A stretch of 54,936 bases of DNA from Schmidtea nova (GCA_044892505.1 CM097883.1:34472001-34526936), one strand, 5' to 3'; positions 16,685 to 39,834 are shown, counted from the stretch's first letter. The notes: generated from the letters alone by a model not told the origin. Numbers and translations: made by a program.

Positions 16685-16702
16685 TGGGGGCTCAGCCGGG
16701 AT
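16685..16702 (+). other. Primer binding site, tRNA-Pro-like
   Basis: TGGGGGCTCAGCCGGGAT matches 16/18 to the canonical tRNA-Pro PBS TGGGGGCTCGTCCGGGAT; it begins 6 nt after the LTR end. Confidence 0.8.
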
Positions 16703-17006
16703 CAACTTTGTTTTATGCGGAAAAGGTGAACCCAATGACAACAGAGAAATTTAAAGTCAGAATTTTGTGAGTAGAAATAGTAACCGAAAGAGTAATCGAG
16801 ATAAAAGTGAGTTGCGTGGAAATAGATAATTACAGACAGGGAATTAAAACAAATTAGTAGATATATTGAACAAATGCATTCATAAATAACAGGTCGGGAC
16901 GACAATTTACCGAAACACGGGGGGAGGCTATAAAACTGTCAGAAACGAAACACAGTACTACTTTTCGAATAATATTAACACAGTAATTAAATAAATTATC
17001 TAGGAA

Positions 17007-17468
17007 ATGGAGGAAAAACTGAAAGAAATCGAGGAATTTTTCAACACCGAGAACGATACATTTGAGACAGTCTGCGAAAAAATAACCCGAATAAGAGCAT
17101 CCGAATATGAGGAACCTACGACACAAACTGAGGAAACAACTGAGTTAATAAAAATCATAGAGAAAGTAAATAAACTCGATATAAATACGCGATATAAATG
17201 GTACAAAGCACGATTAGAGGATGCCGAGTTGAATATCAGATGCCGACATATAGAACAGCAGTTAAGCCTAACATATAACCGATGGATGTCGCAAGGGGTC
17301 GAGGCAGCAAAACAATATAAACAATGTTACATATGCGAAAACAGTGAAATCCAAATAATGTTTTTACCATGTGGACATTTTCGATTCTGTAAAAACTGTG
17401 CGAATAAGTGTGATGAGTGCCCCATGTGCAATTTCTCTGTAGCTGATAAAATTGTGGTTTATTTATAA
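17007..17468 (+). CDS. Retroelement-borne RING E3 ligase, IAP/MDM2-type C-terminal C3HC4 RING, no BIR domain, 153 aa
   Basis: CYICENSEIQIMFLPCGHFRFCKNCANKCDECPMC...KIVVYL* has the LPCGH core and hydrophobic C-terminal tail typical of IAP-type RINGs; helical N-terminus. Confidence 0.85.
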   Translation: MEEKLKEIEEFFNTENDTFETVCEKITRIRASEYEEPTTQTEETTELIKIIEKVNKLDINTRYKWYKARLEDAELNIRCRHIEQQLSLTYNRWMSQGVEAAKQYKQCYICENSEIQIMFLPCGHFRFCKNCANKCDECPMCNFSVADKIVVYL

Positions 17469-18098: not shown

Positions 18099-18150
18099 GA
18101 GGCCAAAGAGCCATATTGAATGACCTAGCTAGGCGTTATTGAGAGATACG

Positions 18151-18308: not shown

Positions 18309-18351
18309 TTAATTAGAGGCCAAAGGAGCCAATAGGGATATCCGGATATAT

Positions 18352-19115: not shown

Positions 19116-22100
19116 TTGAGAAAAGGAGAAAAGAGTGTCATAATAAAACCAGCAGAAAAGAATAAAGCTACCAAGAATAATAATCAGAAAGGCCTAAAAG
19201 GAAGTAAAGCAAGGCAAATAATAATACAAAAGTCGATTATCGAAAACGATAAATTATCAGTAACAAGCAACAGTTCAAGCAACAAAGAAAATCAAGCAGA
19301 ACCCGAGAGAAACCCAATAAGTGAAATAGAAGTCGACAAAACCAACAACGATTATATAGAAGAAATAGAAGACGAAGTAGAACAAGAAACAGAAAGTGAC
19401 GATACCGATAACGATAGTAAAGCATCAGATAACGAATCAGCAAAAGAAACTGAGATCGACCGAAATTCGAGTGACGAACCTAACAGTGAACTAGAAACAA
19501 GAGGAAACGAAAGTAAAATAACTACAGACAGCGGAATCGAAATGAGTGAACCAAGAGAAGAGATAAAAGACAAATTTTCCGGAGAACCGTTTAATGGAGA
19601 TGCGAGCAAACTGGAAACTTTCTTAAAAGAATTTGGCATATTCGTGGAAGTATGCAAGTGGAAACCAGAAACAACTGTAAGCAGAATTCAGCTATATTTG
19701 AAAGATAGCGCATTAGATCTATATTTGGAAGCAAAAAATGGAACTAATCCACCTACAAGTTGGTCAGCGATAAAGGACTTTTTCCAACAAACCTTTGGAA
19801 TAAACAAAGTATTGAATGAGGCATTCACGGAATTCTCAATGAGGAAACAAAAGATAAATGAATCGAATGCGGTATATGCGAGCGAATTGAAAAAGTTAGC
19901 AAAGTTGATCTTTAATCAAGACAGCCCAATAAATGAGGAGTTAATGGCAGCTATCTTTGTGGGAGGATTAAGAAGACCCGACATAAGAGCGCAAGTTGGA
20001 TGTCAAGGGTGTAAAACCATCGACCAAGCACTAGAAACAGCTAATAGATTTGAACTACACATGATAGGAAATGATGGTAGAATCTATTTAGCTATGGATA
20101 CAGCACAAAACGAACAAGAAGTGAACCTGAATAACCACATTCCAAATTCACAACAATTAAACCGACCACCACCGCAACGAAGGAATGAAGGGAATAAAGT
20201 ATCAAATTACGGAAATCAAAACAATTACAACCCCCAAGGACCAACGAAACAATGCAAAACATGTGGGAAATTGGGACATTGGCAACAAGAATGTTATCAG
20301 AACTTGAATTGTGGAAAATGTGGAGTAAAAGGGCATTCAGAGAGCAGATGTTACACAATAACCTGTTTTAATTGTGGACGGCCTGGACACCTATCAAGAA
20401 ATTGCGGACAAAGAAGCAATCAACGAGGAAACTGGCAGAATACCGGAAACCGACAAAACTATGGAAACCAACCAACTGGTGGAAATCGACAGAATTATGG
20501 AAATCAGCCAAATAATGGAAACCAACCGGAATACGGAAACCAACCAAATAGTAATAATAATAACCAAAATAAAAATACCACTAAAGAGATACATTTAATG
20601 CAAGAGGTCCAAAGATTGACGGAGCTGATAAACAATACAACCAGAGGAAATCCGCAAACAGGTCAACAACAAATCAATATGATGAGAAAAATAGAAAGCG
20701 AAAACGAACGATTGAATCGGGAAAGTCAAGCACGACATGCTCAGGAATGGGCAAGAATACAAAGAGAAGAGGAACAAAAACAGCAAGAAAGAGAACGACA
20801 ACCTCTAAGAATTAATATGATGAGAGCAACCAATCAAACAAATACCCACGAGAAAGAGACTGTACCAGAAATAAATCCAACAAACCCGAATCCAACCAAC
20901 AACGAAGGCCGAAAAGAGATAATACAAGAAGATGAAGAAGCAGAAAAAGAAACAGAAAAGGAAGTAGAAAAAGAAGGGAACCAAGAAGAGAAAAGGAAAC
21001 TCGGGAAAAGAGGAATGATGGTAATTTTGCCAAACAAGCACGTGTTTCGATTCCAATATAACATAAAAGAAGAAGTAGAAATATTGTTCAATAAAGTGAA
21101 TGAAATGGCTCCAGGAGTAACGAAACTGCCCAGAGAAGCATTCCTAAAAATAGAAGGTGCACCAGAAGTAAAATTGAAACTAACGGATACATGGGAAAAC
21201 CTGGGAGTAGTAGAGACAAAAAGAAATGTGATGGTAATCAAGGAAATAGAACCAGAAGGAATTCCATCGCCAGTGCGTCACGAAACACGAATCAGTCGAA
21301 TATTTAAAGGGAAAATGATACGAAGACGGTTGGGAGAAATAGACGAGTTAGAACGAAAAATGAGAAAGGTCGGAGTAGTAGACGACAAGAGTGAATCAAC
21401 ACAAAAAGCTATTAAAAGTGAAACAAGACCAACGGAAAATACACCAAGTGAAATCAACCAAATAAAACACATTAACATGTTGAGAGGCCAGGCAAAGAAA
21501 TTCTCAGATGACGAAGAGGATAGTGACGTCAGTAGTCTAGCCGGAGATATGCTAAACGAACCGGAAATTGAAGACAAAAAGATAGAAGTAGTAAAGACAC
21601 CAGAAACTATTCAAGTAAAAGAGGACGAGATCCAGAAATTATTAGATAACGCGCTAGAAGTAATATATAATGAGGAATTCATTGACAAGAAACACTATAG
21701 AAAATTCATGAGAGCAATATTACAAATGAACTATAAAGAGTGGTTACCAGGCCGAGAAGTAGAAACACTAAGCCAGTACGTAGGAAAATTATTAAAAGAA
21801 CCACTCCATGAATATATAATCCTAATAGAGATAAAAACATGTTTGCCAAGGATTTGGATCAAAACTCCACTCACGGAAGATATTTATCAATGGGTAGAAG
21901 ATAGATTAGGGAGTTCATATAAAAACAAATTCCTCTATTCACAGAATGGACTAGTGAAGAAAAGGACGCATTTGATAGAAACAGGCATATGGCCAGGAGA
22001 GGTGACAACACTATCGATATGCGATGATAAGAGAGAAGAGAACCTACAAGAAGTAGCAAAGGAAGCAAATATGTGTTTCGAGAAGAAGATAAAACCACGG

Positions 22101-23909
22101 TTAGAATATGAGAAAGGACGAATCTTACGAGGAAATCTAAATTCCATGATAGAACAAATCATCCCACAAATCAAAAAACATAGAAAGGAGTTAATGAGAA
22201 GCGAATACGAAAAGTTGAAACGATGTATCGAATGCATACGTGACACAAGTCACACGAGATGGTCACAGATCTCATACGGAAAAGTAATTGCAAAAATGGG
22301 AAAAGCAATGTTCAGACAAGGGAAAATAACAGATCTGAAAATTGCAGTAGAGTTACCTAATGAGGATACCAAAGAAATTGAAGTGGTAGCAGATTGTACC
22401 ATAAAAGAATTAGTAAATGTCATCAACGAGACACTATTACAAAGAGAACCAGAAGAAGAATGGGAAGATGACATAATCATGAAATACAACGAACATGTAT
22501 TATGGGATCACGATGAAAGACGGCTATATAAAATTGGTATATGGGATAATCACCAAACCATCCACGTTATCAGAATGGACGATACACCAAGAGAAACTGC
22601 TAAGGATGAGAAAAGAGAACGGGAACGACAAAAAGAAGTTGTGCATAAATTACAACAAATAGTAGACATTTATCGAAATTGGCGGATTTGGCCAGAATGG
22701 GAAGATGTATTAGAAGAACTCAATCTCAACAGACGATTACGAACACCTGTAGAAAAACAATGGAACGAACGAGGAAAATGTTGGGAACCAAAAGCAGGCG
22801 AATACGAAGAGGAATACGGAATAGGCATAGAAGACGATCACAAACCGGAAACCGGAAGAGTCTGTATGGTAACAAGAAAAGCCATGCCAGCAGATTTAGA
22901 CGGACCAGAAACGACAACCATGTGGTTGGAAAGAGAAAAACAAAAAACGGAAGAATTTGTCGAAATATTAAAAACCAATGCGCACGGCAAGAGAAAAGTA
23001 GTAAAAGGTCTCGCAGATTTTTTCGTAGTTAATGGAGAAGACATAACATGCTTGCGTAAAGTAGCAAAAGCAATCGCCGAATACAAAAGAGTTAACGAGT
23101 GGTGTCCAGAACAATTGGATCACGTGATTAAAAAATGGAGAAACCAAGAATTCTCGCAGGAATCGCCACAGAAAGTACACCTAAGAATAGTATATCCGAA
23201 CCAAGAAAAGGAAGAGTTTTGGGTAGGGATAGCGGAGAAAGTTCGAGACATTAAAAAGAAATTGAGATATGAACCACCATTCCATTTACAACACCAAGGA
23301 CGATCATTAGATAACAGCTTGGAAATTGGAATAACGCCAGCGCAATTAGATATCGCAAATACATTGACAGTGGCAGCAATAGCAGGCCAACCATTGAAAT
23401 TGAAAGAGGAAAAGAAACCAAAAGGAAGTATGAGTACGCCGAGCCCAATGAAATCGGTAATGACTCCAGGAACAAGCTCAGAACAAGCTAGAACAACACC
23501 AAGAGAGACAAGAGAAAGAACACCACCAGAACCATACGATGTAGACGAAATTTTTACAGATAGCGATGATATGTTAGAGGAGTTAATAGAGCTAACAAAA
23601 GAGAAAGATGATAATATTTTCGAAAGAATTCAAGAATTACCAACAGCAATACCGGTAACCAACACCGAAGATGAAGTCGAACAAGAAATAATCATAGAAG
23701 AAGTAAATGAAATAGCAGAAGAGGAAGCAAGGAGGGCAAATGTAGAAAACGTACAATTCACACAAGAAATGGAAAGATGGTTAGAAGAAAGAGCCAATGA
23801 ACCAAGAGACGTCACAGAAGAAACTGGACGAGAAACAAGATTAGTAGAAACGGGCACGACAATGGATAAACGACCTAGAGGTAGACCAAGATGGATCCAG
23901 CAAATGTAG
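19116..23909 (+). CDS. gag: Gag polyprotein (capsid-like region, three CCHC zinc knuckles, N/G/Q-rich repeats, long extension with ubiquitin-like modules)
   Basis: PFNGDASKLETFLKEF capsid-type start; CX2CX4HX4C three times at 20253-20405. The ORF-track start is TTG; the first in-frame ATG is at 19542 and the frame is open from 19083. Confidence 0.9.
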   Translation: MRKGEKSVIIKPAEKNKATKNNNQKGLKGSKARQIIIQKSIIENDKLSVTSNSSSNKENQAEPERNPISEIEVDKTNNDYIEEIEDEVEQETESDDTDNDSKASDNESAKETEIDRNSSDEPNSELETRGNESKITTDSGIEMSEPREEIKDKFSGEPFNGDASKLETFLKEFGIFVEVCKWKPETTVSRIQLYLKDSALDLYLEAKNGTNPPTSWSAIKDFFQQTFGINKVLNEAFTEFSMRKQKINESNAVYASELKKLAKLIFNQDSPINEELMAAIFVGGLRRPDIRAQVGCQGCKTIDQALETANRFELHMIGNDGRIYLAMDTAQNEQEVNLNNHIPNSQQLNRPPPQRRNEGNKVSNYGNQNNYNPQGPTKQCKTCGKLGHWQQECYQNLNCGKCGVKGHSESRCYTITCFNCGRPGHLSRNCGQRSNQRGNWQNTGNRQNYGNQPTGGNRQNYGNQPNNGNQPEYGNQPNSNNNNQNKNTTKEIHLMQEVQRLTELINNTTRGNPQTGQQQINMMRKIESENERLNRESQARHAQEWARIQREEEQKQQERERQPLRINMMRATNQTNTHEKETVPEINPTNPNPTNNEGRKEIIQEDEEAEKETEKEVEKEGNQEEKRKLGKRGMMVILPNKHVFRFQYNIKEEVEILFNKVNEMAPGVTKLPREAFLKIEGAPEVKLKLTDTWENLGVVETKRNVMVIKEIEPEGIPSPVRHETRISRIFKGKMIRRRLGEIDELERKMRKVGVVDDKSESTQKAIKSETRPTENTPSEINQIKHINMLRGQAKKFSDDEEDSDVSSLAGDMLNEPEIEDKKIEVVKTPETIQVKEDEIQKLLDNALEVIYNEEFIDKKHYRKFMRAILQMNYKEWLPGREVETLSQYVGKLLKEPLHEYIILIEIKTCLPRIWIKTPLTEDIYQWVEDRLGSSYKNKFLYSQNGLVKKRTHLIETGIWPGEVTTLSICDDKREENLQEVAKEANMCFEKKIKPRLEYEKGRILRGNLNSMIEQIIPQIKKHRKELMRSEYEKLKRCIECIRDTSHTRWSQISYGKVIAKMGKAMFRQGKITDLKIAVELPNEDTKEIEVVADCTIKELVNVINETLLQREPEEEWEDDIIMKYNEHVLWDHDERRLYKIGIWDNHQTIHVIRMDDTPRETAKDEKRERERQKEVVHKLQQIVDIYRNWRIWPEWEDVLEELNLNRRLRTPVEKQWNERGKCWEPKAGEYEEEYGIGIEDDHKPETGRVCMVTRKAMPADLDGPETTTMWLEREKQKTEEFVEILKTNAHGKRKVVKGLADFFVVNGEDITCLRKVAKAIAEYKRVNEWCPEQLDHVIKKWRNQEFSQESPQKVHLRIVYPNQEKEEFWVGIAEKVRDIKKKLRYEPPFHLQHQGRSLDNSLEIGITPAQLDIANTLTVAAIAGQPLKLKEEKKPKGSMSTPSPMKSVMTPGTSSEQARTTPRETRERTPPEPYDVDEIFTDSDDMLEELIELTKEKDDNIFERIQELPTAIPVTNTEDEVEQEIIIEEVNEIAEEEARRANVENVQFTQEMERWLEERANEPRDVTEETGRETRLVETGTTMDKRPRGRPRWIQQM

Positions 23910-26900
23910 TTATAAAATCAAGAGAGGAAAAAAGACGGGATCAATGGGATTTGTGTCTAAAGAAACTAAATAAAATAGCCGTAACGAAAGAAAAAGAAAC
24001 AACACAAACATACCAAGGCGAGGAATGGATATCAAAGATGTTAATGGAAATACTGGCAATAATCGATCCGGAATTAAAGAAATGGTGGAGAATAAATGAA
24101 ATAAGCGAAAGGGCGAAATCACTGCATAGCGCCATCGCACCAATCCTACCAGAACTAATAAAAGAGAAGACAAGGTCAAATCACCTAGATTGGCAAGGAA
24201 CCACGATGTTGATAAAGAAGTTAACGGAAGGAGCAGAGACGGATAACAAATATTTAATAGCTATGGCATACACCATCTACAATCTGCTGACACTGAGTAG
24301 AGGTCGACTGAAACCCACAGCACTTGAAAGACATATAAAGAATACAGCCAAAATTATAGAGAAAGAAATAGAACCGTACATCATCAGTAAAGGAGGATGG
24401 GAAACATTCACAAAAACGAACCAAAAGAAAAACCAAGCCAAAAATATGAAAAAGAAATTCGAAGAGATATTGGGAGAATTGGAAAAGGAAAAGTCGGGAA
24501 CAGGAAACGGGAAATCATCACTAAACCTGAGTTCTATCATTATGATGATGTTAATATGGATGATTAGTACTGACGGAGCAACAGCATTTGAAGTATTCGA
24601 TTGTGATCAAATGGCATTAGGTGAAAAATACTCATTACGAGGGACAGAACAATGTAAAGACGCAACCCCAACGGAGTTAAAAACATTAAAAAAGAGACAA
24701 TTATACCACGTATATCAGGAAGCTGAACTGATAAGAACAATGGTCAGAGAATGCAAAGTTTATAAAACCAGATTTGCTTTTTATTGTGGACACCGCCATT
24801 ATTCAGCAATCGTGATGCCAGGAACGGAAAGAGAATCGGTAATGCTGCAAGGAGAAGACTGTGAAAAATTATTTAAACATGGAGAAGTAGAGACTAGAGA
24901 TAGAGTAAAGATAAGAGGAAAAACGGGAGTGATATTGCAACAAACATATTATGTAGCAGGAGCTATTACGGGAGGAGAAGGGTACTGCCAAGGAGCAACA
25001 TATCCAATATTCGGAGTAGCAGCAACAAACCTAGTGGTAATAGATACGTATACAGTGGAACTAAAAACGTACGAGGCATTCTTCGATCCAACGACGGGAG
25101 AAATGAAAACTCTACCTATGTGCAAAATCGAGTCAAACACTTGTCAGACTGGTATGTCAACCCTAACCTACCAGATACGAGGGAAGGAATGTCAACTACA
25201 ACTGTTAAAGGAAGCAGAATTCGATGAGATACAAGGGAAAACCTTCCAAGAGGAAGAAGAAGACGAGGCAGCAAGAGGAAAAATACTTCAAGACACAGTA
25301 CGGGGAGAGAAAAAGATTGAAACCCGAACACAAGAAAAACAAATTAAAATGAGAAATACACCAACGGTACTAATTACCTCAGATGCAGATATCGGAATGA
25401 GGTTTGTAAAAGGAAAAACAGCCTTGAAATGCGGAGTAGCCATGTTGGAAACCAACTACCCCGGCATTTTTGTATCAAAACAAGAAGTACCTAGTGCGAA
25501 ACGCAAAGTACACACGAACGATGTTAAATTACACCTTTACATGAACAATAAAATGGATTTTCTATTCCATAGAGGACAAGCGTCACTACAAAAAGTGTAT
25601 TACGATTTAATAAACAACGATTGCATATTAAATAGGGAAATATTAAAGACAAAATTAGCAGTAGCAATCACAAACCCGGATAGTGCAATGCCATTATTAC
25701 CATTAAGAGAAGGTCATTTTGGAAGAGTAGTCGGAGAGGTCATGTACGTATACATATGTAAAAAGACAAATGCGAAGGTAGCGACAATGACAAAACTACA
25801 ACCAGGTCAGTGTACTAACGAACTAGAAATCGAATATAAAGGGAAAGTAAGATATGTACAACCAGTGACAAGAATCATAAATCCAGTAAGTTTCGAACCA
25901 AACCCTTTCAATTGTAGCAACGCATATGGACCACTATACCAAAAACCAGACGGAAATTGGGTTATGTTTCCGTCAAGAACAGAGGTACCAGCACCAAGAG
26001 AATTTGAATTAATGCAACTATCAAAAGGACGAAAATTTAAAGACGTAGATGTAAGCAATATGGGATTCTATAGTGCAAAGGATTTAGAAGCAGCAAGACA
26101 AAACATACTATTTCCGGCAAGACGAGAAGCGGTGTTATCCAGTATTGTAACAATAACAGGAGGAACAAATTACCAAGGTGGACCAAATTACGAATTATTA
26201 TTGTCACCAGCCCACTTTAAGAAGGCAACGGAAAACATGATGAAAGCGATGTGGGGAAGATTTTTAATATTTGGACAAATGATGGCAGGAATACTTGGTG
26301 TTATACTAATTATACAAATAATACGGGTAATAATAACGCAAATGTTAGCCTGTTTTGACATCTATAAAAGAGAAAAGAAAGTAAATTGGAAATTGGTGGT
26401 AGGATTCTTACCATTTTTGGCTAAAACAATGGTATTACACGGTCATTCAAAAGATATTCACCGAATAAAGAGACTCCTAAAAATACTGGCAAAAATGAAA
26501 GGAACCGATGAAGAGGTGGGACGAAAATTTAAAAAGATAATGAATAACGAGCAAGCAAGACAACAACTAAAGAAAGAGAGAAAAGGACTATGGGAAAGAA
26601 TGAAAGGGTACAGAACCCAAGACGATTCCAGTGACGACGATGATGATGATAACGAAGGAGGTCAAGTATTTAAAAATCAAGTACCACAGTATGTCGAAAA
26701 GAATCCAGCGGAAATGTGGAAGTGTTACGCACCCCCACCAACCATGTACCAAGAACCAACACCAGGGATGAGACAAAATACAATGCAAATGATGCCGATG
26801 ACAAACATATATCCTATGATACCAGAAGACTATAGAACGAGACGGTGCAGAAGCGTAGATCCGCAAGGAGACTCACATACAATTGCAGTAATGTCATCAA

Positions 26901-29900
26901 ACACCGGTCCAGTATTAACTACAACAATCGAAATTAACGGAAGGGAAATTGAAGCGATGATTGATACAGGAGCAAATATCTCAGCAATAGATATAAAATG
27001 GATACCACAAGAACAAAGACGGGATATTGAGAGAACCAACGTTCACGTAATAGCATGCAGTAAAGAAGTAGTAGAAGTTTCCGGAAGATGGCGGGTAAAG
27101 ATAAAACATCAAAGCACGGAAATCGAAACGTACGTAGCAGTAATACCAGCACTGAGCGTACCATGCATTATAGGTACGGATCTGATGCCAGCATTATTTA
27201 AAGAAATAGTTATTGACCTCGGAACAATGAGATTAAAGGATAGGACAGGACAGATATGCGCAATAGAAGCAAAAGTAACAAGTTCGAAACAAATAATCGT
27301 ACCAGCACGGAGAGAGAAAATATGTTTCGTAAAAATAGATCCTACAATAGAAGGTGACATGATCTTTGAACCCAGTAAAAGATTTGAAAAGAGAAAGTCG
27401 TTGCCAATGGCAAGGGGATTAGTGAGTGCGAATGACAACGGAGAAATCCCGATAAATGTAGTAAATTTCGATGAGGAGGATAAAATAATTTATGAAAATG
27501 AAAGATTAGGTAAACTAACTCCAATGATAGATATCGAAATACCAATAAAAGAAGGAGTAAAAGAGGAGGAACCCACTTGGAACATTGATAGCCAACTATT
27601 AAATGAGGACCAAAAGAAACAGCTAGAAAGATTACTGATGGAATATAAAGACATATTCGCAACATCCGATTTAGATTTAGGGACATGCGACGTCACACTA
27701 CATACGATTCCACTAACAGACGAAACGCCGATTGCGTTAAGACCATACAAGTTAGCTGAAGCGCAAAAATCAGTAGCAGAAGCAGAGGTACAGAAAATGC
27801 TAGACGCAGAAGTAATTGAACCAAGCTGCTCACCGTGGCAATTCCCAGTTGTAATGGTGAAAAAGAAAGACGGAACACAACGATTTTGTATTGATTATCG
27901 GAGATTAAATGCAGTTACAAAAAGGGATACATACCCATTACCAGACATCAACGAGATGTTATTGACATTACAAGGAGCGGCATACTTTACATCATTAGAT
28001 TTGAAAAGCGGATACTGGCAAATTAAAATGAAGGAGGAAGACAAAGAGAAAACTGCTTTCACTATCGGAAGAGACTTGTACCAATTTAGGAAAATGCCAT
28101 TCGGACTAACCAATGCGCCAGCATCATTTCAAAGATGTATGAATTTCGTTACCCACGGCATAAAACAATGCATGGTTTACATTGATGACCTACTAATCTA
28201 CTCAAGCACATTTGAACAACACATCCAAGATATCAGAGATGTATTTGTGAGATTGAGACAATGGAAACTTAAGCTCAAACCATCGAAATGCGATTGGGCA
28301 AAAGAGAAAGTGACATTCTTAGGACATATTGTGTCCGCAAAAGGAAAGGAACCAGATCCCAGAAACATTGATAAAGTAAAAGAATGTCCAGTACCAAAGA
28401 CGATAACGCAGATCCAAGAATTTCTCGGATTATGCGGTTACTATAGAAAATTCATAAAGGATTACGCAGGAATTGCAAAACCAATCCAGGAGCTAGTAAA
28501 GAAAGACGTATCGTTCATATGGGGAAGCGAACAACAAACAGCCTTCGAAACATTACGAGATAAGTTAATAACTGCACCAATATTGGTTCACCCGGATTTC
28601 AAGAAGCCATTTTTACTCGCAACCGACGCAAGTGGATATGCAGCAGGAGCAGTGTTAGGACAATATGATGACGAGGGAAAAGAGCGGGTAATCGGATATT
28701 ATAGCAGAACATTCAAGAAACACGAGAAGAATTATTCAGTAACGGAAAGAGAAGCATTGGCGATAATATTAGCAATAAAACACTTTAAATATCTACTATG
28801 GGGACACATTATATGCATAACCACGGATCATCAACCACTGGTATGGCTAGGACAACATAAGGAAACATCCAGCAGGTTGATGAGATGGGCGATGCAATTA
28901 CAAGAATATTCACCAGATATAAAATTCAAATCAGGGAAAGCGAATGCCAACGCAGATTGCATGTCAAGATTAACGTTTCCAGAACTAACAGACCCAGAAG
29001 TGCAAAGAATATGCATAGTGATAGCAGAGGATTTGGATTTCAGCGAGTTGAAGAAAGATCAGCAAGAGGATAAAGAACTAAGACCCATCATAGAATTCCT
29101 AAGCTCACGAAATATGGATGTATTCAAAGACAATGCAGAGTTAAAGGAACACATGAGGAAATACCAACATCGATACACAATAGAAAAAGGATGGTTATTA
29201 ATACGAGATGGAGAGAAACGATTAATGTGTCTGCCAGGTAATAGACGAAAAGAGATAATAACTCAATACCATGACGGAAAGTTGGGAGGACACATGTCCG
29301 ATAAGAAAACATTAAATCGCATGAGACAAAAATATTATTGGCCAACAATGGACGAAGACGTAAAGGAATGGATAAAGAACTGTTTAACTTGTGCCACAAG
29401 AAAGGATAGTGGGAAGAAATGGAAAAATCCTTTAAAACCCATGCCAATACCAGCGGAACCAATGACTACCATTGCGATGGATGTAATAGGACCATTGCCA
29501 GAAAGTTTAAACGGGAATCAATATATATTGGTAATAACGGATTATTTGACTAAATTCCCTGAAGCATTTGCGATGCCGGATCAAAAAGCAAAGACCGTAG
29601 CAAGAATTTTAGTAGAGGAAATATGTTGTCGATACGGAACCCCGAAACAAATACTAACAGATCAAGGAACAAATTTTATGAGCGAAATATTAGATGAAGT
29701 AACAAATTACTTCCGGATAGCTAAATTACGAACGTCACCATATCATCCGCAAACCAATGGACAAACGGAAAGATTTAACGGCACATTGATTCGAATGTTA
29801 TCCAATTATGTAAGCAAACACCAAACAGATTGGGATGAATACGTAAAGCTATGTCTAATGGCATACAGAATGTCGATACACGCAGCAACAAAATTGAGCC

Positions 29901-32900
29901 CATTTCAATTAATGTATGGAAGGGAATGCAATATGCCAATAGATCTTGAATATCAACCACCTTTGTCTCAATATATGGAGGAAGATGATTACGTCACCAA
30001 ATTCAAAGAACGAATGCAAGAGATATGGAAGACAGCAGAACTGAACATAAAGTTTTACCAAGAAAGTTACAAGGACCTACACGATCAAAAGAAAAATGTT
30101 AAAACAAATGATCTTAAACCAGGAGATTGGGTAATGATAGAAACCCCAGAAATAATACCAGGAACCGTTAAAAAACTACAAAGACCAGGAAAAGGCCCTT
30201 ACGAAGTTATATACAAAAAGGAAAACAATGTGAAGGTAAAACTTGTTAATCGACCATTGATACGACCAATATACGTTAATACATGCAGATGTAAAAAAGT
30301 ACCAAAGACAATAACCACAGCGCCAGAAGAACGGATAATAACCAGATCCCAAACAGCCAGAATGAATATGCTCAGAGCAACCAATGAAAGTACCGAAGCA
30401 GAGAACAATCAACGAGAAAAAAGAAACAAGGAAATTGTACTAAAAGCCAGAGAAATAATGGGAAAATGGCATGTCAGAGACGATATATTAAGAGATATTC
30501 AGTCGATAATTAGTGATTACGCAAGGGGACTACCAACAAAACCAGTCATTTCAGAACTACTGGAAAAGATTCCAGAAATACTTTCACTAGAAGACATAGG
30601 AGGACAACCAGCACTACATAACGCCATAAAATGGGGAGAAGTAGAGAGAGTAAAAGAATTTCTAAAAATCGCTAAGGAAACAAACCAACACCTTGGTTTT
30701 GGGAATAGCGAACAAGAAACACCATTAATGGTAGCAACCATCTACAAATCGGATAAAGCAATAATAGACCTTTTGATAAATGCCGATTTCAACTGGACGG
30801 AACGTGATAGAGAAAACAAAACAGTCTTGAATCACGCAATATGGAGCTCAAATCAGATAATGCTCAAACAAATAATCGAGAAGGCCACTTGGGAAATAGA
30901 CGAACTGATCAAAGGTGATATAATCAAGGAGGCAATAAAAATCGGTAACTGCAAAACAATACGCAAGCTAATAAAATGGAAAAGATCCGAAAATGATACA
31001 TGGGTATTAAATATAAACGAAGTATACAGTAAAGGACAAAACGCGTTATTACAAATTCTATTAAAATTCGTTTGTGATCAGAAAACACTGTTAACGCTAT
31101 TAGATAGAGGAAACATCATAATGTCCAAAAACAAAGAGGAGTGTAAATTCGAAAGTGAAAAAGAAGCATTATTCAGGAATATTAGGGAATGGTGTACAAA
31201 ATCGCTAACCAAGACGATAACTTACAAAGATATATCCAATTTTCAAGACAAATACAAAACGGTGGAGGAGGAGTATGACAAACTAATAGACATATTAAAC
31301 CACCCCGAAAAATGCAAACAATTCCTATGTCGAAAGGAAAGAGAAAGCAAAAGGAAATTTACACCACTTTTCAGCGCAGAAGTACCATATCAAGAAAGGT
31401 TAGATGCGATACAGGACAAAGCAAAAGAACTATTACCAGAATTCGAAAATTCTAAACATACACTGGAGATACTCGGAGCAATTGTGGAAAAGGTACATGC
31501 ATACGCGGAAGGAACTTACAATGAAAACGATATGATGATCATAAAAAGAGAAATGCCAGTGACTTTCTTATTAACAAAGAATGGAGTATTGCCAATACAT
31601 AGAGCCTTACGAGCAAGAAAAGAGAGGAGGGTAGTCGAAATTGCACGGTTGATGCAAGATTGCGGAAGTGACATGAACATGAAAGATAAAAAGGGAGATA
31701 CCCTCATGATATTTGCAGCAAGAGCGAACACAAAAACCCGAGTGTTACAGGAACTGTACGAAGCAGGTGCAGGACTCATGGGAAGAACTAACAAAGACAG
31801 CTCAATACTAGACGTAGCGTTGTTAACGCACAATTGGGAAGTGATAAATTTCATAAAAACAATCACAAATCAGGAGGAAATAGAATACCTTACAAGGACA
31901 GTTAAAAAAGCTAGCGTACATTCCATGATGCATAACGCTGAACTAACTGAAGTAATACTCAATTGGATGAACCCAAACACCAATGAACCAGCATTCAGGA
32001 TCAACGAGTGCATGGAACAAGGCCAGAATTTATATATAAAGTGTGCATTAATAATAAACAAATGGCCAAAGATAATAGATATCTTCATGAGAAGAAAAGA
32101 TTTACGATTCACAAACAACCCAAAGGAAACAGAACGTACGGACAAATGGAAAGAACTAATGAAAACGTACCTTAATAATTGGATAAAAGCCAAGAAAGAG
32201 ATTCTAGATTGTAAATTAACCGATAAGGAAATACCTAAGCAGGCAGAAACACAAGAATACGAAGCAAGTATACTCACAACCATAACGTATGAAAAAATGA
32301 TAGAAGCAATTAATGTCGAGGACGACATTTTCAACGACCAAAGGGGAGGTGACAATACAGGAAACGACGACGATAGTACTCGAGAAAATCCAGAGGATCA
32401 TGAGTTATCCGATAAAGAGGACAGTGAAGAGAAAGGAAGGGACACAGAGAAAAATGATAAGAACAATGAATTTGGGAAACAAAGAAACAACAACTATAAA
32501 AATAAAAACGAAGTAAAAAGAACAGGCTACAAACAAACAATAAACCCATTCTTTAAACCAGAACTATTATTACTAACGGTAATCATGACCTTAATTAGTC
32601 CAACTCAAGGAATGATATGTGAAGAAAAAGCGACAATACAAATTGGAAACGCAAAAGGAATCGAACGAGTATGTTGGTCAAAAAAGGACAAAATATCGGG
32701 ACAAAATAGTCCAATGGATTGCAGGATCTCAGAATATGAACAAGAAATCATAGAGATCGATGACTTAGAGCTAGATACTTGGTACAGAATGTGCACCGTT
32801 CGGAAACCAAAGGATCCGAGATCACATAAGACAATTGCATGTGCAAATTACCTAACACCCAAGGTAACCATAACAGTACAGCAGTCATCCAAAGGAGACT

Positions 32901-34504
32901 ATGTCGTAGGAAAGTGTGGAAGAACAGAGACACAAGGAACAAAAAACAAGAAACCTCAGACAATAGACAGACGAACAACGCCAACTATACAAATTACCAT
33001 AGACAGGCCCGAAGTAAGAGTAACCACAAATGAAACTGAAAGAGTGACCTACCAAGCAGAATTACTATGTTTAGCACTCATATTAACAATGTTAAAACGG
33101 TTAGAAGAAGGGATAGACATTGACACAATGGCAGTAACAGAGATGAACGACACCCAAAACACCAACCCAAAGTGTTGGGCCAGAAGCAACGAAGAAATTG
33201 GCGTAAGCGAAATAAAGACGAGTCGGAAAAGGAAAACAAATAAAGTAACCAAGATATCAGAAGTAAAAGCAGACAGGACGTATGAACTATGTTTACTAGA
33301 AAAAGAAAGACACAAGAAAGGAACGACAATTTGTAAAACATTTCAACCTGGGGAAACAATAAAGTTCATACGACGAGGAAGAAGAAATAAACGCACCAAA
33401 CGGAGAACAACTATAATGTTAGAGTTAACCGGAATAGAACCGGACGTCAAAGGCGTATGCTGGAAGAAGCAGGAAAAGAAAACAAACCAGAATACACCGC
33501 CGCAATGTCGAACAAACAGAGGAACAACCACAATACAGATAGAAGGGTTAGAAAGTAATCAAACGTACGAAATATGCCTGATCAGGAAGAGCGACAAAAT
33601 AACAGTAAATGAACTGGAATGCAAAATATATAAAACACCCACCAGAACAAGAATTGGAAAGACAACGCGAAAAAGCAGAAGACAACGGAACAAAGGAAAA
33701 ACGAGGTATACCACTACTTTTAAACCTAATGGACAACAGAAAAACCAAGAAATACAAATAAAAACCGAAAAGAATACTACAGCAACTCTTATACTATGGA
33801 GAATAGACAATAAAACGTTAGAAATATGTTGGGCAGTAGTCCAGGAACAAAAAGAAAGACAGCCACGATACTGCGAAAACGTAAAAGGAAAAGAAGAAAT
33901 GAGTATCAAAAATCTGAAATTTAATAGAGAATACGAGATATGTGCGGTAGAAAAGACGGACATATTAGGAAATCAGCAGGAAAAATGCGAAACGTACTAC
34001 ACACCGGTAAACTCAACGTCCAAAGGGAAAGTGAGAAAACTCGAATTTAAAGAATTAAGTCAGACAACGAAACAAATGGACGCGGAACAAGTAGTAATAG
34101 ACCCTTACGCAAGATGGACGCCGGAAGAAGTAATTAAAGAAGTTAAAAGAAAACAACAAGAACGAGAACAACTACTAAATAAACTAAAGGGACAATACGG
34201 ACCAATGATTAACCAGAGTGAAATTACGAAGATGGACGTAAACAAACAAGTTAGAGAACTAATTGGTCTGGGAATACTAGCAGCAACTATTCCAGTAATA
34301 ACAGTATTATTAATAATATGGATATATGATGTATTCAACAAGAAACCAATAACACATTGGCCAGATATAAAGATTATGAACTACAGTATAGAATTACCGG
34401 AAGAAGTACAGAAAGAATTTCAAAGGAGGACGAAAGGCAAAGAATTTTGGAGACAAATAGAAGATGAAGAGCGATACGAAGGAAAGACAGTGATGGTGAT
34501 ATAG
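23891..34504 (+). CDS. pol: 3,537-aa polyprotein: Bcl-2-like, envelope glycoprotein, PR, RT, RNase H, IN, ankyrin repeats, FN3-like membrane protein
   Basis: DTGA protease (D at 26963), YIDD RT (28178), ATDAS RNase H (D at 28625), HHCC plus D,D(35)E integrase (D 29480, D 29660, E 29768), GPY motif (30194); the extra domains are listed separately. Confidence 0.96.
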   Translation: MDPANVVIKSREEKRRDQWDLCLKKLNKIAVTKEKETTQTYQGEEWISKMLMEILAIIDPELKKWWRINEISERAKSLHSAIAPILPELIKEKTRSNHLDWQGTTMLIKKLTEGAETDNKYLIAMAYTIYNLLTLSRGRLKPTALERHIKNTAKIIEKEIEPYIISKGGWETFTKTNQKKNQAKNMKKKFEEILGELEKEKSGTGNGKSSLNLSSIIMMMLIWMISTDGATAFEVFDCDQMALGEKYSLRGTEQCKDATPTELKTLKKRQLYHVYQEAELIRTMVRECKVYKTRFAFYCGHRHYSAIVMPGTERESVMLQGEDCEKLFKHGEVETRDRVKIRGKTGVILQQTYYVAGAITGGEGYCQGATYPIFGVAATNLVVIDTYTVELKTYEAFFDPTTGEMKTLPMCKIESNTCQTGMSTLTYQIRGKECQLQLLKEAEFDEIQGKTFQEEEEDEAARGKILQDTVRGEKKIETRTQEKQIKMRNTPTVLITSDADIGMRFVKGKTALKCGVAMLETNYPGIFVSKQEVPSAKRKVHTNDVKLHLYMNNKMDFLFHRGQASLQKVYYDLINNDCILNREILKTKLAVAITNPDSAMPLLPLREGHFGRVVGEVMYVYICKKTNAKVATMTKLQPGQCTNELEIEYKGKVRYVQPVTRIINPVSFEPNPFNCSNAYGPLYQKPDGNWVMFPSRTEVPAPREFELMQLSKGRKFKDVDVSNMGFYSAKDLEAARQNILFPARREAVLSSIVTITGGTNYQGGPNYELLLSPAHFKKATENMMKAMWGRFLIFGQMMAGILGVILIIQIIRVIITQMLACFDIYKREKKVNWKLVVGFLPFLAKTMVLHGHSKDIHRIKRLLKILAKMKGTDEEVGRKFKKIMNNEQARQQLKKERKGLWERMKGYRTQDDSSDDDDDDNEGGQVFKNQVPQYVEKNPAEMWKCYAPPPTMYQEPTPGMRQNTMQMMPMTNIYPMIPEDYRTRRCRSVDPQGDSHTIAVMSSNTGPVLTTTIEINGREIEAMIDTGANISAIDIKWIPQEQRRDIERTNVHVIACSKEVVEVSGRWRVKIKHQSTEIETYVAVIPALSVPCIIGTDLMPALFKEIVIDLGTMRLKDRTGQICAIEAKVTSSKQIIVPARREKICFVKIDPTIEGDMIFEPSKRFEKRKSLPMARGLVSANDNGEIPINVVNFDEEDKIIYENERLGKLTPMIDIEIPIKEGVKEEEPTWNIDSQLLNEDQKKQLERLLMEYKDIFATSDLDLGTCDVTLHTIPLTDETPIALRPYKLAEAQKSVAEAEVQKMLDAEVIEPSCSPWQFPVVMVKKKDGTQRFCIDYRRLNAVTKRDTYPLPDINEMLLTLQGAAYFTSLDLKSGYWQIKMKEEDKEKTAFTIGRDLYQFRKMPFGLTNAPASFQRCMNFVTHGIKQCMVYIDDLLIYSSTFEQHIQDIRDVFVRLRQWKLKLKPSKCDWAKEKVTFLGHIVSAKGKEPDPRNIDKVKECPVPKTITQIQEFLGLCGYYRKFIKDYAGIAKPIQELVKKDVSFIWGSEQQTAFETLRDKLITAPILVHPDFKKPFLLATDASGYAAGAVLGQYDDEGKERVIGYYSRTFKKHEKNYSVTEREALAIILAIKHFKYLLWGHIICITTDHQPLVWLGQHKETSSRLMRWAMQLQEYSPDIKFKSGKANANADCMSRLTFPELTDPEVQRICIVIAEDLDFSELKKDQQEDKELRPIIEFLSSRNMDVFKDNAELKEHMRKYQHRYTIEKGWLLIRDGEKRLMCLPGNRRKEIITQYHDGKLGGHMSDKKTLNRMRQKYYWPTMDEDVKEWIKNCLTCATRKDSGKKWKNPLKPMPIPAEPMTTIAMDVIGPLPESLNGNQYILVITDYLTKFPEAFAMPDQKAKTVARILVEEICCRYGTPKQILTDQGTNFMSEILDEVTNYFRIAKLRTSPYHPQTNGQTERFNGTLIRMLSNYVSKHQTDWDEYVKLCLMAYRMSIHAATKLSPFQLMYGRECNMPIDLEYQPPLSQYMEEDDYVTKFKERMQEIWKTAELNIKFYQESYKDLHDQKKNVKTNDLKPGDWVMIETPEIIPGTVKKLQRPGKGPYEVIYKKENNVKVKLVNRPLIRPIYVNTCRCKKVPKTITTAPEERIITRSQTARMNMLRATNESTEAENNQREKRNKEIVLKAREIMGKWHVRDDILRDIQSIISDYARGLPTKPVISELLEKIPEILSLEDIGGQPALHNAIKWGEVERVKEFLKIAKETNQHLGFGNSEQETPLMVATIYKSDKAIIDLLINADFNWTERDRENKTVLNHAIWSSNQIMLKQIIEKATWEIDELIKGDIIKEAIKIGNCKTIRKLIKWKRSENDTWVLNINEVYSKGQNALLQILLKFVCDQKTLLTLLDRGNIIMSKNKEECKFESEKEALFRNIREWCTKSLTKTITYKDISNFQDKYKTVEEEYDKLIDILNHPEKCKQFLCRKERESKRKFTPLFSAEVPYQERLDAIQDKAKELLPEFENSKHTLEILGAIVEKVHAYAEGTYNENDMMIIKREMPVTFLLTKNGVLPIHRALRARKERRVVEIARLMQDCGSDMNMKDKKGDTLMIFAARANTKTRVLQELYEAGAGLMGRTNKDSSILDVALLTHNWEVINFIKTITNQEEIEYLTRTVKKASVHSMMHNAELTEVILNWMNPNTNEPAFRINECMEQGQNLYIKCALIINKWPKIIDIFMRRKDLRFTNNPKETERTDKWKELMKTYLNNWIKAKKEILDCKLTDKEIPKQAETQEYEASILTTITYEKMIEAINVEDDIFNDQRGGDNTGNDDDSTRENPEDHELSDKEDSEEKGRDTEKNDKNNEFGKQRNNNYKNKNEVKRTGYKQTINPFFKPELLLLTVIMTLISPTQGMICEEKATIQIGNAKGIERVCWSKKDKISGQNSPMDCRISEYEQEIIEIDDLELDTWYRMCTVRKPKDPRSHKTIACANYLTPKVTITVQQSSKGDYVVGKCGRTETQGTKNKKPQTIDRRTTPTIQITIDRPEVRVTTNETERVTYQAELLCLALILTMLKRLEEGIDIDTMAVTEMNDTQNTNPKCWARSNEEIGVSEIKTSRKRKTNKVTKISEVKADRTYELCLLEKERHKKGTTICKTFQPGETIKFIRRGRRNKRTKRRTTIMLELTGIEPDVKGVCWKKQEKKTNQNTPPQCRTNRGTTTIQIEGLESNQTYEICLIRKSDKITVNELECKIYKTPTRTRIGKTTRKSRRQRNKGKTRYTTTFKPNGQQKNQEIQIKTEKNTTATLILWRIDNKTLEICWAVVQEQKERQPRYCENVKGKEEMSIKNLKFNREYEICAVEKTDILGNQQEKCETYYTPVNSTSKGKVRKLEFKELSQTTKQMDAEQVVIDPYARWTPEEVIKEVKRKQQEREQLLNKLKGQYGPMINQSEITKMDVNKQVRELIGLGILAATIPVITVLLIIWIYDVFNKKPITHWPDIKIMNYSIELPEEVQKEFQRRTKGKEFWRQIEDEERYEGKTVMVI
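23903..24415 (+). other. Bcl-2-like domain at the N-terminus of the polyprotein
   Basis: EIEPYIISKGGWETF aligns with Bcl-xL BH2 HLEPWIQENGGWDTF and is preceded by a hydrophobic alpha5-like helix. The BH1 NWGR motif is degenerate. Confidence 0.7.
24521..26356 (+). other. Envelope glycoprotein: internal signal peptide, Cys-rich ectodomain and TM anchor; chuvirus-glycoprotein-like
   Basis: Signal LSSIIMMMLIWMISTDGATA|FEVFDC; motifs CKVYKTRFAFYCG, GYCQG, ETNYPGIF, LYMNNKMDFL, GEVMYVYIC, CTNELEIEYKG...PVTRII recall chuvirus-type G proteins; TM at 26261-26356. Family call is from memory. Confidence 0.75.
30590..32100 (+). other. Ankyrin-repeat region (two clusters) after the integrase
   Basis: GQPALHNAIKWG, ETPLMVA, KTVLNHA, GVLPIHRA, GDTLMIFAA and SSILDVA are TPLHxA-type repeats with D/N-x-x-G hairpins. 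Confidence 0.8.
32558..34504 (+). other. Second secretory module: signal-like segment, four Cys-containing FN3-like repeats, TM helix, short tail
   Basis: ELLLLTVIMTLISPTQG|MICEE; a repeated CW..C..I..L....Y.+C....C..Y.TP pattern; TM LIGLGILAATIPVITVLLIIWIY at about 34259-34327. Confidence 0.65.
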
Positions 34505-38290: not shown

Positions 38291-39834
38291 AACTGATATA
38301 TTACATTCACTTTATGTATGATCCACTTACATTTAACAATAATATGACTTTGTGCTTACGTATAAAATCTATCACCTTACGTGATTCTTTGTGTATATGT
38401 AAATTGACATTTATCTGCTTAATTTTTATGTATGATGATATAGGTGTAAATGTATAATTAATTGCGGGACGCAATTTTAGGGGTCCCCGAGTGATGTTGG
38501 GCCAGCCAAATAGAGAAAAAAATGAAATAAAAGTAGATTAATTAAAACAAAAAAGAGAAAAATAAGGTAAAAAGGGGAATATTTATTTATTAAAAGAAAG
38601 GAATAATATAGTAAAAATATAGAATAACTAAGTACAAGCTATAAATAAAAATAAATGAATTTATAGATATTAACGGGCCCAGGAGACATCTAAAAACAAA
38701 TAAAATACAAATAATAATAATTAAAACCAAATAAAAGTACTTGTTATTGAATAATTGTTTTTGAAACCCGGACCTCCAAGGAAGAATACAATCTAAAAAA
38801 TAAAAATTAATTAGAATCAAAAACAATAATTAAAACCCACCATGAAATCGGCCAAATCCGATTGGTCAGTCTAGATCAGACTGATCAGTATAAATACTGA
38901 TCAGACTTTGGATAAAACAGACTTAATACCTAATCTTACAACGTCAGTTGAGAGTGTAAAATTTAGCTCACTAATCAAATAGACTTTGAATTCTAGACGA
39001 ACCGATCGAAGCAAACCCAGACGAATTAGGTATTTTGGTTTCTGTATTATTTTATTCATGATTGTGTCATTTGCTTTGTCATTTATCTATTGATCTAATT
39101 ATTTATGTATTTATGCATTCATGTGTTGAAATTTGTTATATGAATTAAACGTTATTGTGATTAGACTCAACATTAAAATATATAATGATCATATTAATTT
39201 TGCGCCGTTGGGAGCTTTAGGTTCCCAAGGTGTCCGTCCGTGGCGTGGTGCTCGAGGGCTCCACACACGGTAAAGTAATAAATAGTAAAGCACAATTTTA
39301 TTAGTAGTGGTTGAGACTTGCACATGGGACACCCAACAAATCCGGGAAATTATTTTCTGATCATTTTAGCTACAGAGGGGACGAGAAATTTTTGATAAAG
39401 CTTAAAGATATGAAAGAAGTTGTTAACCGGGAGGAGGCACAATTTTTCACCCTCACCATAGCGCCGCTGTTTAATAAACGTCTAATAAACCTTAGGAAAA
39501 TTATGTCGACCGCGTTTGGTACAAAAGAGCGTTTTTTTCGAATAAACTAGGGATACATGACGGGAGAGAGCTTCCGTTTTGAGTTACCAATATTTTGAAA
39601 CTCCAAGCAGACGAATCACCATTTTTTTCGTCTATCAAATTGATCATAAACAGATAAAGCTAAGTAGATACGAGAGTAATGCATACTGTAACAAACAACA
39701 GTTTTTTCTTGATTTCAGCTAAGGTCTAAGGGGAAGGCAAATAATAAAGGAATCACGATGAGAGATAACATTTACTATGATTAATTATTGATGTAAATTG
39801 TAACTATTATAAAATTCAGCATCGTTTTAGAATC

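What the first reader, a model, noticed from the sequence alone, without database searches (positions are those of the whole stretch)
23891..30310. Envelope glycoprotein fused in frame upstream of protease-RT-RNase H-integrase
The canonical order is gag-pol-env with env in its own ORF. Here a single ORF runs Bcl-2-like, internal signal peptide, chuvirus-like ectodomain, TM anchor, cytoplasmic linker, then PR-RT-RH-IN. The predicted topology puts the enzymes on the cytoplasmic tail of the fusion protein. The inference is that Pol reaches budding particles tethered to Env rather than Gag, tying replication to enveloped and possibly infectious particles. Chuvirus-type G capture is known for BEL/Pao elements; I do not know of an Env-Pol fusion in Ty3/Gypsy.
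Basis: partly seen in the sequence, partly recalled or inferred. Interest (0 to 1): 0.92.

Follow-up and report, generated by a model that had tools for sequence, protein, structure and literature searches.

The report
Giant retroelement with envelope–polymerase fusion
An intact 28-kb retrovirus-like mobile element encodes a virus-derived envelope protein in the same reading frame as its protease, reverse transcriptase and integrase; the layout is real and conserved, but it was already described in 2019 for the giant 'Burro' elements of planarian flatworms.

Summary
Window 23891-34504 is one stop-free ORF of 3537 codons. It encodes, in order, a Bcl-2-like domain, an internal signal-peptide-like segment, a chuvirus-type class III (gB-like) fusion glycoprotein, a TM helix, a variable linker, then PR-RT-RNase H-IN. 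It runs 4.2 kb past the finding's end, through ankyrin repeats to a C-terminal TM helix.

It sits in a 28.3-kb Ty3/gypsy LTR element (13434-41739). The two 3245-bp LTRs are identical, the target-site duplication is TTAA, and there are gag (three CCHC knuckles), RING and TRAF-like ORFs.

At least 12 divergent relatives (27-41% identity in G) keep G and PR in one protein, so the fusion is selected. It is not new. Arkhipova & Yushenova 2019 (PMC6431247) described env in frame between BCL2 and PR in planarian Burro elements. An eLife 2026 paper (PMC13524379) reports GAG-ENV-POL elements with gB-type Env in flatworms.

Additions from this work:
- The G fold is class III.
- The internal signal is the positional homologue of the viral G signal peptide.
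- Here and in three relatives, gag is a separate ORF, with no slippery site at the junction.
- A YPxnL-like motif is enriched in the TM-PR linker.

Whether Pol is delivered by Env rather than Gag remains untested.

The parts
13430..13433 (.). Target-site duplication TTAA (left copy); the right copy is at 41740-41743
13434..16678 (+). 5' LTR, 3245 bp, TG...CA, identical to the 3' LTR. Holds two ORFs (14774-15250, 15567-16151) with no family hit
16685..16703 (+). Primer-binding-site-like 19-mer starting TGG, 6 nt after the LTR. The matching tRNA was not identified
   Evidence: its role is inferred
17007..17468 (+). Accessory ORF, 153 aa, with a C-terminal RING (zf-C3HC4_3)
19542..23909 (+). gag ORF (1455 aa from the first ATG; the frame is open from 19083). 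Three CCHC knuckles at nt 20253-20405. About 1150 aa after them are unassigned
23891..34504 (+). ORF2, 3537 aa, the Env-Pol polyprotein. It has its own ATG with A at -3 and G at +4, overlaps gag by 19 nt and lies in the -1 frame
24188..24409 (+). Bcl-2-like core (BH1-like to BH2-like, aa 100-173) within the N-terminal cytosolic part (aa 1-212)
24527..24595 (+). Internal signal-peptide-like segment (aa 213-235; hydrophobic core aa 216-225; small residues before the conserved mature N-terminus)
24596..26278 (+). Class III (gB-like), chuvirus-type fusion glycoprotein ectodomain, aa 236-796, with 14 Cys
26279..26347 (+). Env transmembrane helix, aa 797-819
26348..26911 (+). Cytosolic tail and variable acidic/proline-rich linker, aa 820-1007. 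It holds a conserved membrane-proximal motif (aa 833-845) and a YPxnL-like motif (aa 973-977, nt 26807-26821)
26921..27193 (+). Aspartic protease (DTGA at aa 1025)
27857..28909 (+). Reverse transcriptase (YIDD at aa 1430) and RNase H
29234..29806 (+). Integrase (HHCC zinc finger and DD35E core)
30614..31819 (+). Two blocks of ankyrin repeats within the C-terminal extension of ORF2
34262..34324 (+). C-terminal TM helix of ORF2 (aa 3458-3478), also present in relative P0001
35077..36459 (+). TRAF-like accessory ORF (TRAF zinc finger plus MATH), 460 aa
36575..38290 (+). Two accessory ORFs (36575-37636, 353 aa; 37718-38290, 190 aa) with no family hit
38495..41739 (+). 3' LTR, 3245 bp

Best explanation
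This is an intact, very recently inserted copy of a Burro-type giant Ty3/gypsy endogenous retrovirus-like element in an animal genome, by inference a planarian.

ORF2 is a polyprotein threaded through a membrane. Its Bcl-2-like N-terminus stays in the cytosol. A hydrophobic segment inherited from the signal peptide of the captured chuvirus-type glycoprotein sends the class III fusogen ectodomain into the ER lumen. The TM helix stops transfer, so the tail, linker, PR, RT, RNase H, IN and ankyrin parts stay cytosolic. Signal peptidase on the N side and the element's own protease on the C side would then free Env.

In this sublineage ORF2 starts at its own AUG rather than by frameshifting from gag, either on a subgenomic spliced RNA or by reinitiation. 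That would keep Env-Pol scarce relative to Gag and place Pol at the membrane where Env sits.

Shown: the anatomy, the homologies, conservation of the fusion, and the absence of frameshift signals. Inferred: the topology, the cleavages, the mode of initiation, and any role in packaging or budding.
For: Element anatomy: identical LTRs, TTAA duplication, PBS-like site and gag with three CCHC knuckles. The closest solved relative of RT-IN is Ty3 Gag-Pol (E 2e-118). G: Pfam PF24664; AF2 model with pLDDT 88.6; Foldseek top 50 PDB hits are all herpesvirus gB (E 5e-13); top viral hits are chu-like virus glycoproteins (E 1e-38, TM-score up to 0.70); named sequence relatives are chuvirus glycoproteins. 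Signal: in 81 free-standing G proteins a hydrophobic N-terminal stretch lies a median of 26 aa before the first conserved Cys, and ORF2's internal segment lies 12-23 aa before the same Cys. The signal-like segment and TM helix are also present in P0001 and the L002 ORF. G and PR lie in one protein in P0001, P0002, P0003, P0005, P0007, P0008, P0013, P0015, P0017, P0018 and P0153, and in P0010. Gag is a separate ORF in the window, L003, L005 and L006, with frame offsets -1, -1, +1 and +1. None has an X_XXY_YYZ heptamer, and the RNA fold after the junction is no better than shuffles (z +0.89). At least seven same-strand ORFs in a row imply several mRNAs or reinitiation. Literature: PMC6431247, PMC13524379, and BURRO1 transcribed and piRNA-controlled (PMC8532177).
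Against: Nothing here reads out transcripts, proteins or particles, so topology, cleavage and initiation are predictions. I used my own hydropathy scripts, not a dedicated signal-peptide or TM predictor. Relatives P0018, P0002, P0005, P0010 and P0019, and the published Burro1, carry Gag in the same ORF as Env, so separate initiation is not a family-wide rule. The ectodomain has only one N-X-S/T sequon, which is unusual for a viral glycoprotein. The host species was not identified.
Confidence: 0.6

Rival explanations
1. Gag, Env and Pol are joined in this element too, by an unrecognised recoding event or a short splice at the gag/ORF2 junction. Pol would then reach particles through Gag as in ordinary retroelements, and Env would be a lumenal loop inside a Gag-Pol polyprotein.
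For: Several relatives have Gag and G, or Gag, G and Pol, in one ORF (P0018, P0002, P0005, P0010, P0019). Burro1 is described as one 4873-aa polyprotein. ORF2 lies in the -1 frame and overlaps gag by 19 nt.
Against: The overlap has no slippery heptamer and the RNA after it is no more stable than shuffles. ORF2's frame opens only 6 nt before an ATG in a strong context. Four lineages have the split with different frame offsets and spacings.
Confidence: 0.25
2. Env and Pol are expressed apart despite the shared frame. The env segment would be spliced out of the pol message, or translation of an env message would not yield stable Pol, so the fusion protein would have no role of its own.
For: Retroviruses and Drosophila gypsy express env from spliced RNA (established knowledge). 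The many ORFs here imply several mRNAs.
Against: No stop follows the TM helix in 12 divergent relatives or in the window. If the segments were read separately, that long stop-free stretch would not need to be kept. The linker holds a conserved motif.
Confidence: 0.1
3. The continuity is an accident of a dead copy or of the assembly.
For: One relative (L006) has its env-pol gene interrupted three times and another (L002) once.
Against: The ORF has 3537 codons and no stops (P about 1e-114). The LTRs are identical, all catalytic motifs are present, and the fusion is conserved at 27-41% identity.
Confidence: 0.02

Closest known systems
Burro / GYPSM1 giant gypsy-like LTR retrotransposons of Schmidtea mediterranea and relatives (Jurka 2007; Grohme 2018; Arkhipova & Yushenova 2019, PMC6431247)
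   Same: Size class (28 kb here, over 30 kb published). Gag with three CCHC knuckles. BCL2-like domain, then env, then PR-RT-RH-IN, then ankyrin. RING and MATH/TRAF modules. Env in frame upstream of PR. AT-rich host DNA.
   Different: Here gag is a separate ORF and TRAF is a downstream accessory ORF. Pfam finds no BIR domain and no dUTPase. The published note likened env to gypsy Env; my tests place it in class III (gB/chuvirus type). I had no Burro sequence to compare, so which Burro family this is remains open.
GAG-ENV-POL 'errantiviruses' with gB-type Env in Nematoda, Bryozoa and Platyhelminthes (PMC13524379; Sacco et al. 2022 as cited there)
   Same: Ty3/gypsy Pol, a class III Env placed between gag and pol, and multiple intact copies.
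   Different: That survey capped the distance between LTRs at 14 kb, so elements of this size fell outside it. It treats GAG, ENV and POL as ORFs and does not discuss an Env-Pol fusion in the passages I read.
Mosquito BEL/Pao elements with a captured chuvirus glycoprotein (Dezordi 2020, PMC7642597)
   Same: The same glycoprotein family, captured by an LTR retroelement.
   Different: Different superfamily: here there are no BEL/Pao family hits and the best relative is Ty3. In those elements env is a separate gene, as I understand that paper from its title and abstract only.
Flavivirus and hepacivirus polyproteins (a likeness in how it works, not membership)
   Same: A cytosolic N-terminal protein, an internal signal, a lumenal glycoprotein and a TM helix, then cytosolic enzymes. 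Processing is shared between host signal peptidase and a viral protease (established knowledge).
   Different: Unrelated proteins and genome type; the likeness is inferred from predicted topology only.

Membership tests
Ty3/gypsy (Metaviridae) LTR retroelement | Paired LTRs with TG...CA ends and a 4-6 bp target-site duplication | tested here: met
   3245-bp identical LTRs and a TTAA duplication
Ty3/gypsy (Metaviridae) LTR retroelement | Pol order PR-RT-RH-IN, with RT closest to Ty3-type | tested here: met
   Pfam order. Best PDB relatives are Ty3 Gag-Pol (7q5b, E 2e-118) and Ty3 RT (4ol8, E 6e-90), far ahead of retroviral RTs
Ty3/gypsy (Metaviridae) LTR retroelement | Gag with nucleocapsid zinc knuckles | tested here: met
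   Three CCHC knuckles
Ty3/gypsy (Metaviridae) LTR retroelement | tRNA primer-binding site next to the 5' LTR | tested here: inconclusive
   A TGG-initiated 19-mer lies 6 nt after the LTR. No tRNA gene is in the window to match it
Burro giant retroelements of planarians | Giant size with a very long multi-domain polyprotein | tested here: met
   28.3 kb; ORF1 plus ORF2 total 5134 codons
Burro giant retroelements of planarians | BCL2-like, then env, then PR in one frame | tested here: met
   described in PMC6431247
Burro giant retroelements of planarians | Accessory modules: RING, MATH/TRAF, ankyrin, BIR, dUTPase | tested here: inconclusive
   RING, TRAF/MATH and ankyrin are present. Pfam finds no BIR or dUTPase. 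Published members also differ in these modules
Burro giant retroelements of planarians | Nucleotide or protein identity to Burro1-4, and a dugesiid planarian host | not testable with these tools
   No Burro or planarian sequences were reachable. The flanking DcpS gene is metazoan with no close named relative
Class III viral fusion glycoprotein, chuvirus type (PF24664) | Family profile match above the curated cut-off | tested here: met
   230.8 bits against a cut-off of 27; 967 homologues, with the near-invariant Cys retained
Class III viral fusion glycoprotein, chuvirus type (PF24664) | gB/G-like fold | tested here: met
   Model pLDDT 88.6. gB hits with probability 1.00 over about 640 columns. 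Chu-like G hits at E 1e-38. The family profile hits gB at E 7e-4
Class III viral fusion glycoprotein, chuvirus type (PF24664) | Signal peptide before the ectodomain and a TM anchor after it | tested here: met
   (hydropathy only)
Class III viral fusion glycoprotein, chuvirus type (PF24664) | Membrane-fusion activity | not testable with these tools
Bcl-2 family | BH1-BH2 sequence signature | tested here: inconclusive
   A four-sequence profile hits Bcl-xL at E 6e-4, and about 55 top hits are all Bcl-2 family. The single sequence gives only E 1.2. Pfam Bcl-2 is sub-threshold in relatives P0006 and P0019 and absent for the window protein
Bcl-2 family | Helical-bundle fold | tested here: inconclusive
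   The single-sequence AF2 model is all-helical but has pLDDT 45.8, so it was not used for fold search
BEL/Pao | BEL/Pao-type protease and RT | tested here: not met
   No BEL/Pao family hits; the Pfam set is Ty3/gypsy-type and the best relative is Ty3

The most novel reading that the evidence does not exclude
In this Burro sublineage no Gag-Pol is made. Pol would exist only as the cytosolic extension of Env, the TM-PR linker would carry an ESCRT-recruiting late domain, and Pol would enter particles through the envelope protein. Reverse transcription would then be tied to enveloped budding, an assembly route not known for any reverse-transcribing virus.
Probability: 0.2. Interest if true: 0.75.

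Novelty: already known. Interest (0 to 1): 0.38.

Why it matters
Burro elements are giant retrovirus-like elements. Besides Gag, Env and Pol they carry look-alikes of host cell-death and signalling regulators (Bcl-2-like, RING, TRAF, ankyrin). They are abundant, transcribed and held down by piRNAs in planarians.

An envelope protein built into the replicase polyprotein is unique among retroelements, and how it is expressed and processed has not been studied. This copy is as intact as one can be, so it is a good reference for descriptive work.

The points added here turn a one-line remark in a review into specific questions for transcript and protein data:
- the class III fold of G;
- the retained viral signal peptide;
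- the separate gag ORF with no frameshift signal;
- the late-domain-like motif in the linker.

Tried and rejected
- Programmed -1 frameshift at the gag/ORF2 junction: no X_XXY_YYZ heptamer in the window, L003 or L005, and the downstream RNA fold has z +0.89. Rfam found nothing in the window.
- Exact-protein look-up of ORF2 for other copies: not on record.
- Bcl-2 test by single sequence: Pfam none; PDB E 1.2; the large protein search found nothing; the single-sequence AF2 model was too poor to use. Only the small family profile gave a usable signal.
- dUTPase between PR and RT, and BIR, both reported for Burro1: not found.
- Troyka superfamily: rejected, because it has CG...CG ends and 3-bp duplications.
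- BEL/Pao: rejected.
- Host identification through the flanking DcpS gene and cluster names: animal only, no species.
- Grohme 2018 and Sacco 2022 could not be read.
- A first regex-based linker scan was too fragile. It was replaced by coordinates taken from BLAST.
Full report
**Observation**

The window holds one + strand ORF from ATG 23891 to the stop at 34504. It has 3537 codons and no stops, while the other five frames of the same span hold 89-390 stops. From base composition the chance of no stop is about 1e-114.

Pfam places the domains in this order:
- a Monjiviricetes-type viral fusion glycoprotein (PF24664, E 3e-68);
- retroviral protease (aa 1011-1101);
- reverse transcriptase (aa 1323-1481);
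- RNase H (aa 1544-1673);
- integrase (aa 1782-1972);
- ankyrin repeats (aa 2242-2643), beyond the finding's end.

Hydropathy gives a short hydrophobic core at aa 216-225, a TM helix at aa 797-819 and another at aa 3458-3476. PR DTGA, RT YIDD, IN HHCC and DD35E are all present. So the description is correct. The only error is the end coordinate: 30310 marks the end of integrase homology, not the end of the ORF.

**Context**

The ORF lies in a 28.3-kb LTR element, 13434-41739.
- The two 3245-bp LTRs are identical, end in TG...CA and are flanked by a TTAA duplication.
- G+C is 0.36-0.40 inside the element against about 0.28 in the flanks.
- On the same strand lie a RING ORF, a gag ORF with three CCHC knuckles, ORF2, a TRAF-like ORF (TRAF zinc finger plus MATH) and unassigned ORFs. 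Two of the unassigned ORFs are inside each LTR.
- The closest solved relatives of RT-IN are Ty3 Gag-Pol and Ty3 RT (E 2e-118 and 6e-90), so the element is Ty3/gypsy, not BEL/Pao.
- The flanks hold a metazoan DcpS gene and a distantly similar RING ORF.
- The host species could not be named. A planarian host is an inference from family resemblance and A+T content.

**The glycoprotein**

A search of 1.84 billion representative proteins with aa 229-830 gave 967 homologues. They fall into two tiers. One is long proteins with G at an internal position. The other is free-standing proteins of about 650 aa, which include named chuvirus glycoproteins.

An AlphaFold model built on 115 homologues has pLDDT 88.6. 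Its 50 best PDB matches are all herpesvirus gB (E 5e-13, probability 1.00). Its best viral matches are chu-like virus glycoproteins (E 1e-38, TM-score up to 0.70). The family profile also hits gB by sequence. The ectodomain is therefore a class III fusogen of chuvirus type. This refines the published comparison with gypsy Env.

In 81 free-standing homologues, a hydrophobic N-terminal stretch lies a median of 26 residues before the first conserved Cys. ORF2's internal hydrophobic segment lies 12-23 residues before the same Cys. It is thus the positional homologue of the viral signal peptide.

**The Bcl-2-like domain**

Single-sequence tests are weak. Relatives P0006 and P0019 give sub-threshold Pfam Bcl-2 hits just upstream of G. 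A four-sequence profile hits Bcl-xL from BH1 to BH2 at E 6e-4, and about 55 of the top hits are all Bcl-2 family. I rate this as likely, not proven.

**Is the fusion selected?**

G and PR lie in one protein in P0001, P0002, P0003, P0005, P0007, P0008, P0010, P0013, P0015, P0017, P0018 and P0153. These are 27-41% identical to the window protein in G. P0018 is a compact CCHC-G-PR-RT-RH-IN polyprotein. The ectodomain, the TM helix and a membrane-proximal tail motif are conserved, while the linker to PR is variable.

Two relatives are decayed. In L002 the polyprotein gene is interrupted once, and in L006 three times. I read these as decay, not as the ancestral state.

**Gag and ORF2**

ORF2 overlaps gag by 19 nt and lies in the -1 frame. 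Its frame opens only 6 nt before an ATG that has A at -3 and G at +4. The same split is found in L003, L005 and L006. Across the four elements the frame offsets are -1, -1, +1 and +1, and the spacings differ. No slippery heptamer is present, and the RNA after the junction folds no better than shuffles. I take the split to be a feature of this sublineage, with ORF2 initiated on its own. Other relatives, and Burro1 as published, have Gag in the same ORF.

**A motif in the linker**

A [LIVM]YP(x)1-4[LIVM] motif occurs once in the TM-PR linker of 10 of 13 family members. That is 10 hits in 2755 residues, against 13 hits in 30,516 residues elsewhere in the same proteins, where about 1.2 would be expected in the linkers. 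It resembles the YPxnL class of viral late domains (reviewed in PMC8402826). This fits a cytosolic linker with a role in budding, but it is a lead only.

**What is known**

Arkhipova & Yushenova 2019 (PMC6431247) describe Burro/GYPSM1 of Schmidtea mediterranea and a Dugesia tigrina relative. The features they list are:
- a giant polyprotein;
- Gag with three or two CCHC knuckles;
- MATH/TRAF, BCL2-like and ankyrin modules;
- an env region between BCL2 and PR that hits mononegavirus fusion glycoproteins.

[quoted passage not shown] PMC13524379 reports GAG-ENV-POL Ty3/gypsy elements with gB-type Env in flatworms, nematodes and bryozoans, and chuvirus-like G next to gypsy Pol. PMC8532177 shows that BURRO1 is transcribed, enriched in the intestine and repressed by SMEDWI-2.

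**Verdict**

The feature is real, intact and conserved, and it belongs to a described family, so I file it as already known. The mechanism I favour is a polyprotein threaded through the membrane and initiated at its own AUG (confidence 0.6). Whether Pol is packaged through Env is open.

- Only the three late-domain patterns were used, as regular expressions. None served as a search query.
- The alignment tools printed consensus lines. I used none of them.
- N runs were left untouched.

Noticed in passing
window 26807-26821 (ORF2 aa 973-977) and the TM-PR linkers of P0001, P0002, P0003, P0007, P0008, P0010, P0015, P0017 and P0153: A [LIVM]YP(x)1-4[LIVM] motif resembling a YPxnL late domain occurs once per linker in 10 of 13 family members. 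That is about 8.5-fold over the rest of the same proteins. P0010 also has a PSAP motif.
   Followed up: partly
window 34262-34324 (ORF2 aa 3458-3478); P0001 aa 3701-3719: The giant polyprotein ends in a strong TM helix about 60 residues before its C-terminus, in the window element and in a 32%-identical relative. The 900 aa between the ankyrin repeats and this helix match no family.
   Followed up: partly
window 13434-16678 and 38495-41739: The LTRs are unusually long (3245 bp) and each holds two ORFs (158 and 194 aa) with no family hit. The two LTRs are identical, so the insertion is very recent.
   Followed up: partly
window 17007-17468, 35077-36459, 24188-24409, 30614-31819: The element carries a set of look-alikes of host cell-death and signalling proteins: an IAP-type RING, TRAF/MATH, a Bcl-2-like domain and ankyrin repeats. 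Relatives L001, L003 and L004 instead or additionally carry RNase_T-type exonuclease ORFs, which are absent here.
   Followed up: partly
window 17469-19541: About 1.6 kb after the RING ORF holds no ORF of 60 codons or more. The gag frame is then open for 153 codons before its first ATG. This hints at an intron or a spliced leader.
   Followed up: no
window 43707-44168 (+): The 3' flank, 2 kb beyond the element, holds a 153-aa ORF with the same C-terminal RING type and the same length as the element's RING ORF, but only 23% identity. It could be a host paralogue or an old remnant.
   Followed up: partly
window 5951-6904 (-): An uninterrupted 317-aa scavenger decapping enzyme (DcpS) gene. The best named relatives are invertebrate and other animal DcpS at 36-45% identity; unnamed ones reach 56-75%.
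   Followed up: partly
window 24596-26278: The ectodomain has 14 Cys but only one N-X-S/T sequon, which is very few for a viral surface glycoprotein.
   Followed up: no
P0001, L002, P0153: Relatives carry two or more aspartic-protease domains in tandem (up to four stretches in P0153) and a further DDI-like one after integrase. The window element has a single PR.
   Followed up: no
P0008 = HBK71150.1: A 2627-aa G-PR-RT-IN polyprotein of this family is deposited as a hypothetical protein of a Flavobacteriaceae MAG. It is most likely a eukaryotic contig binned by mistake. Five distinct lineages (L002-L006) come from one ENA assembly, ERZ25039515.
   Followed up: no
window 52525-54826: Two tandem-repeat arrays, with units of about 120 bp and 29 bp, lie in the right flank.
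   Followed up: no
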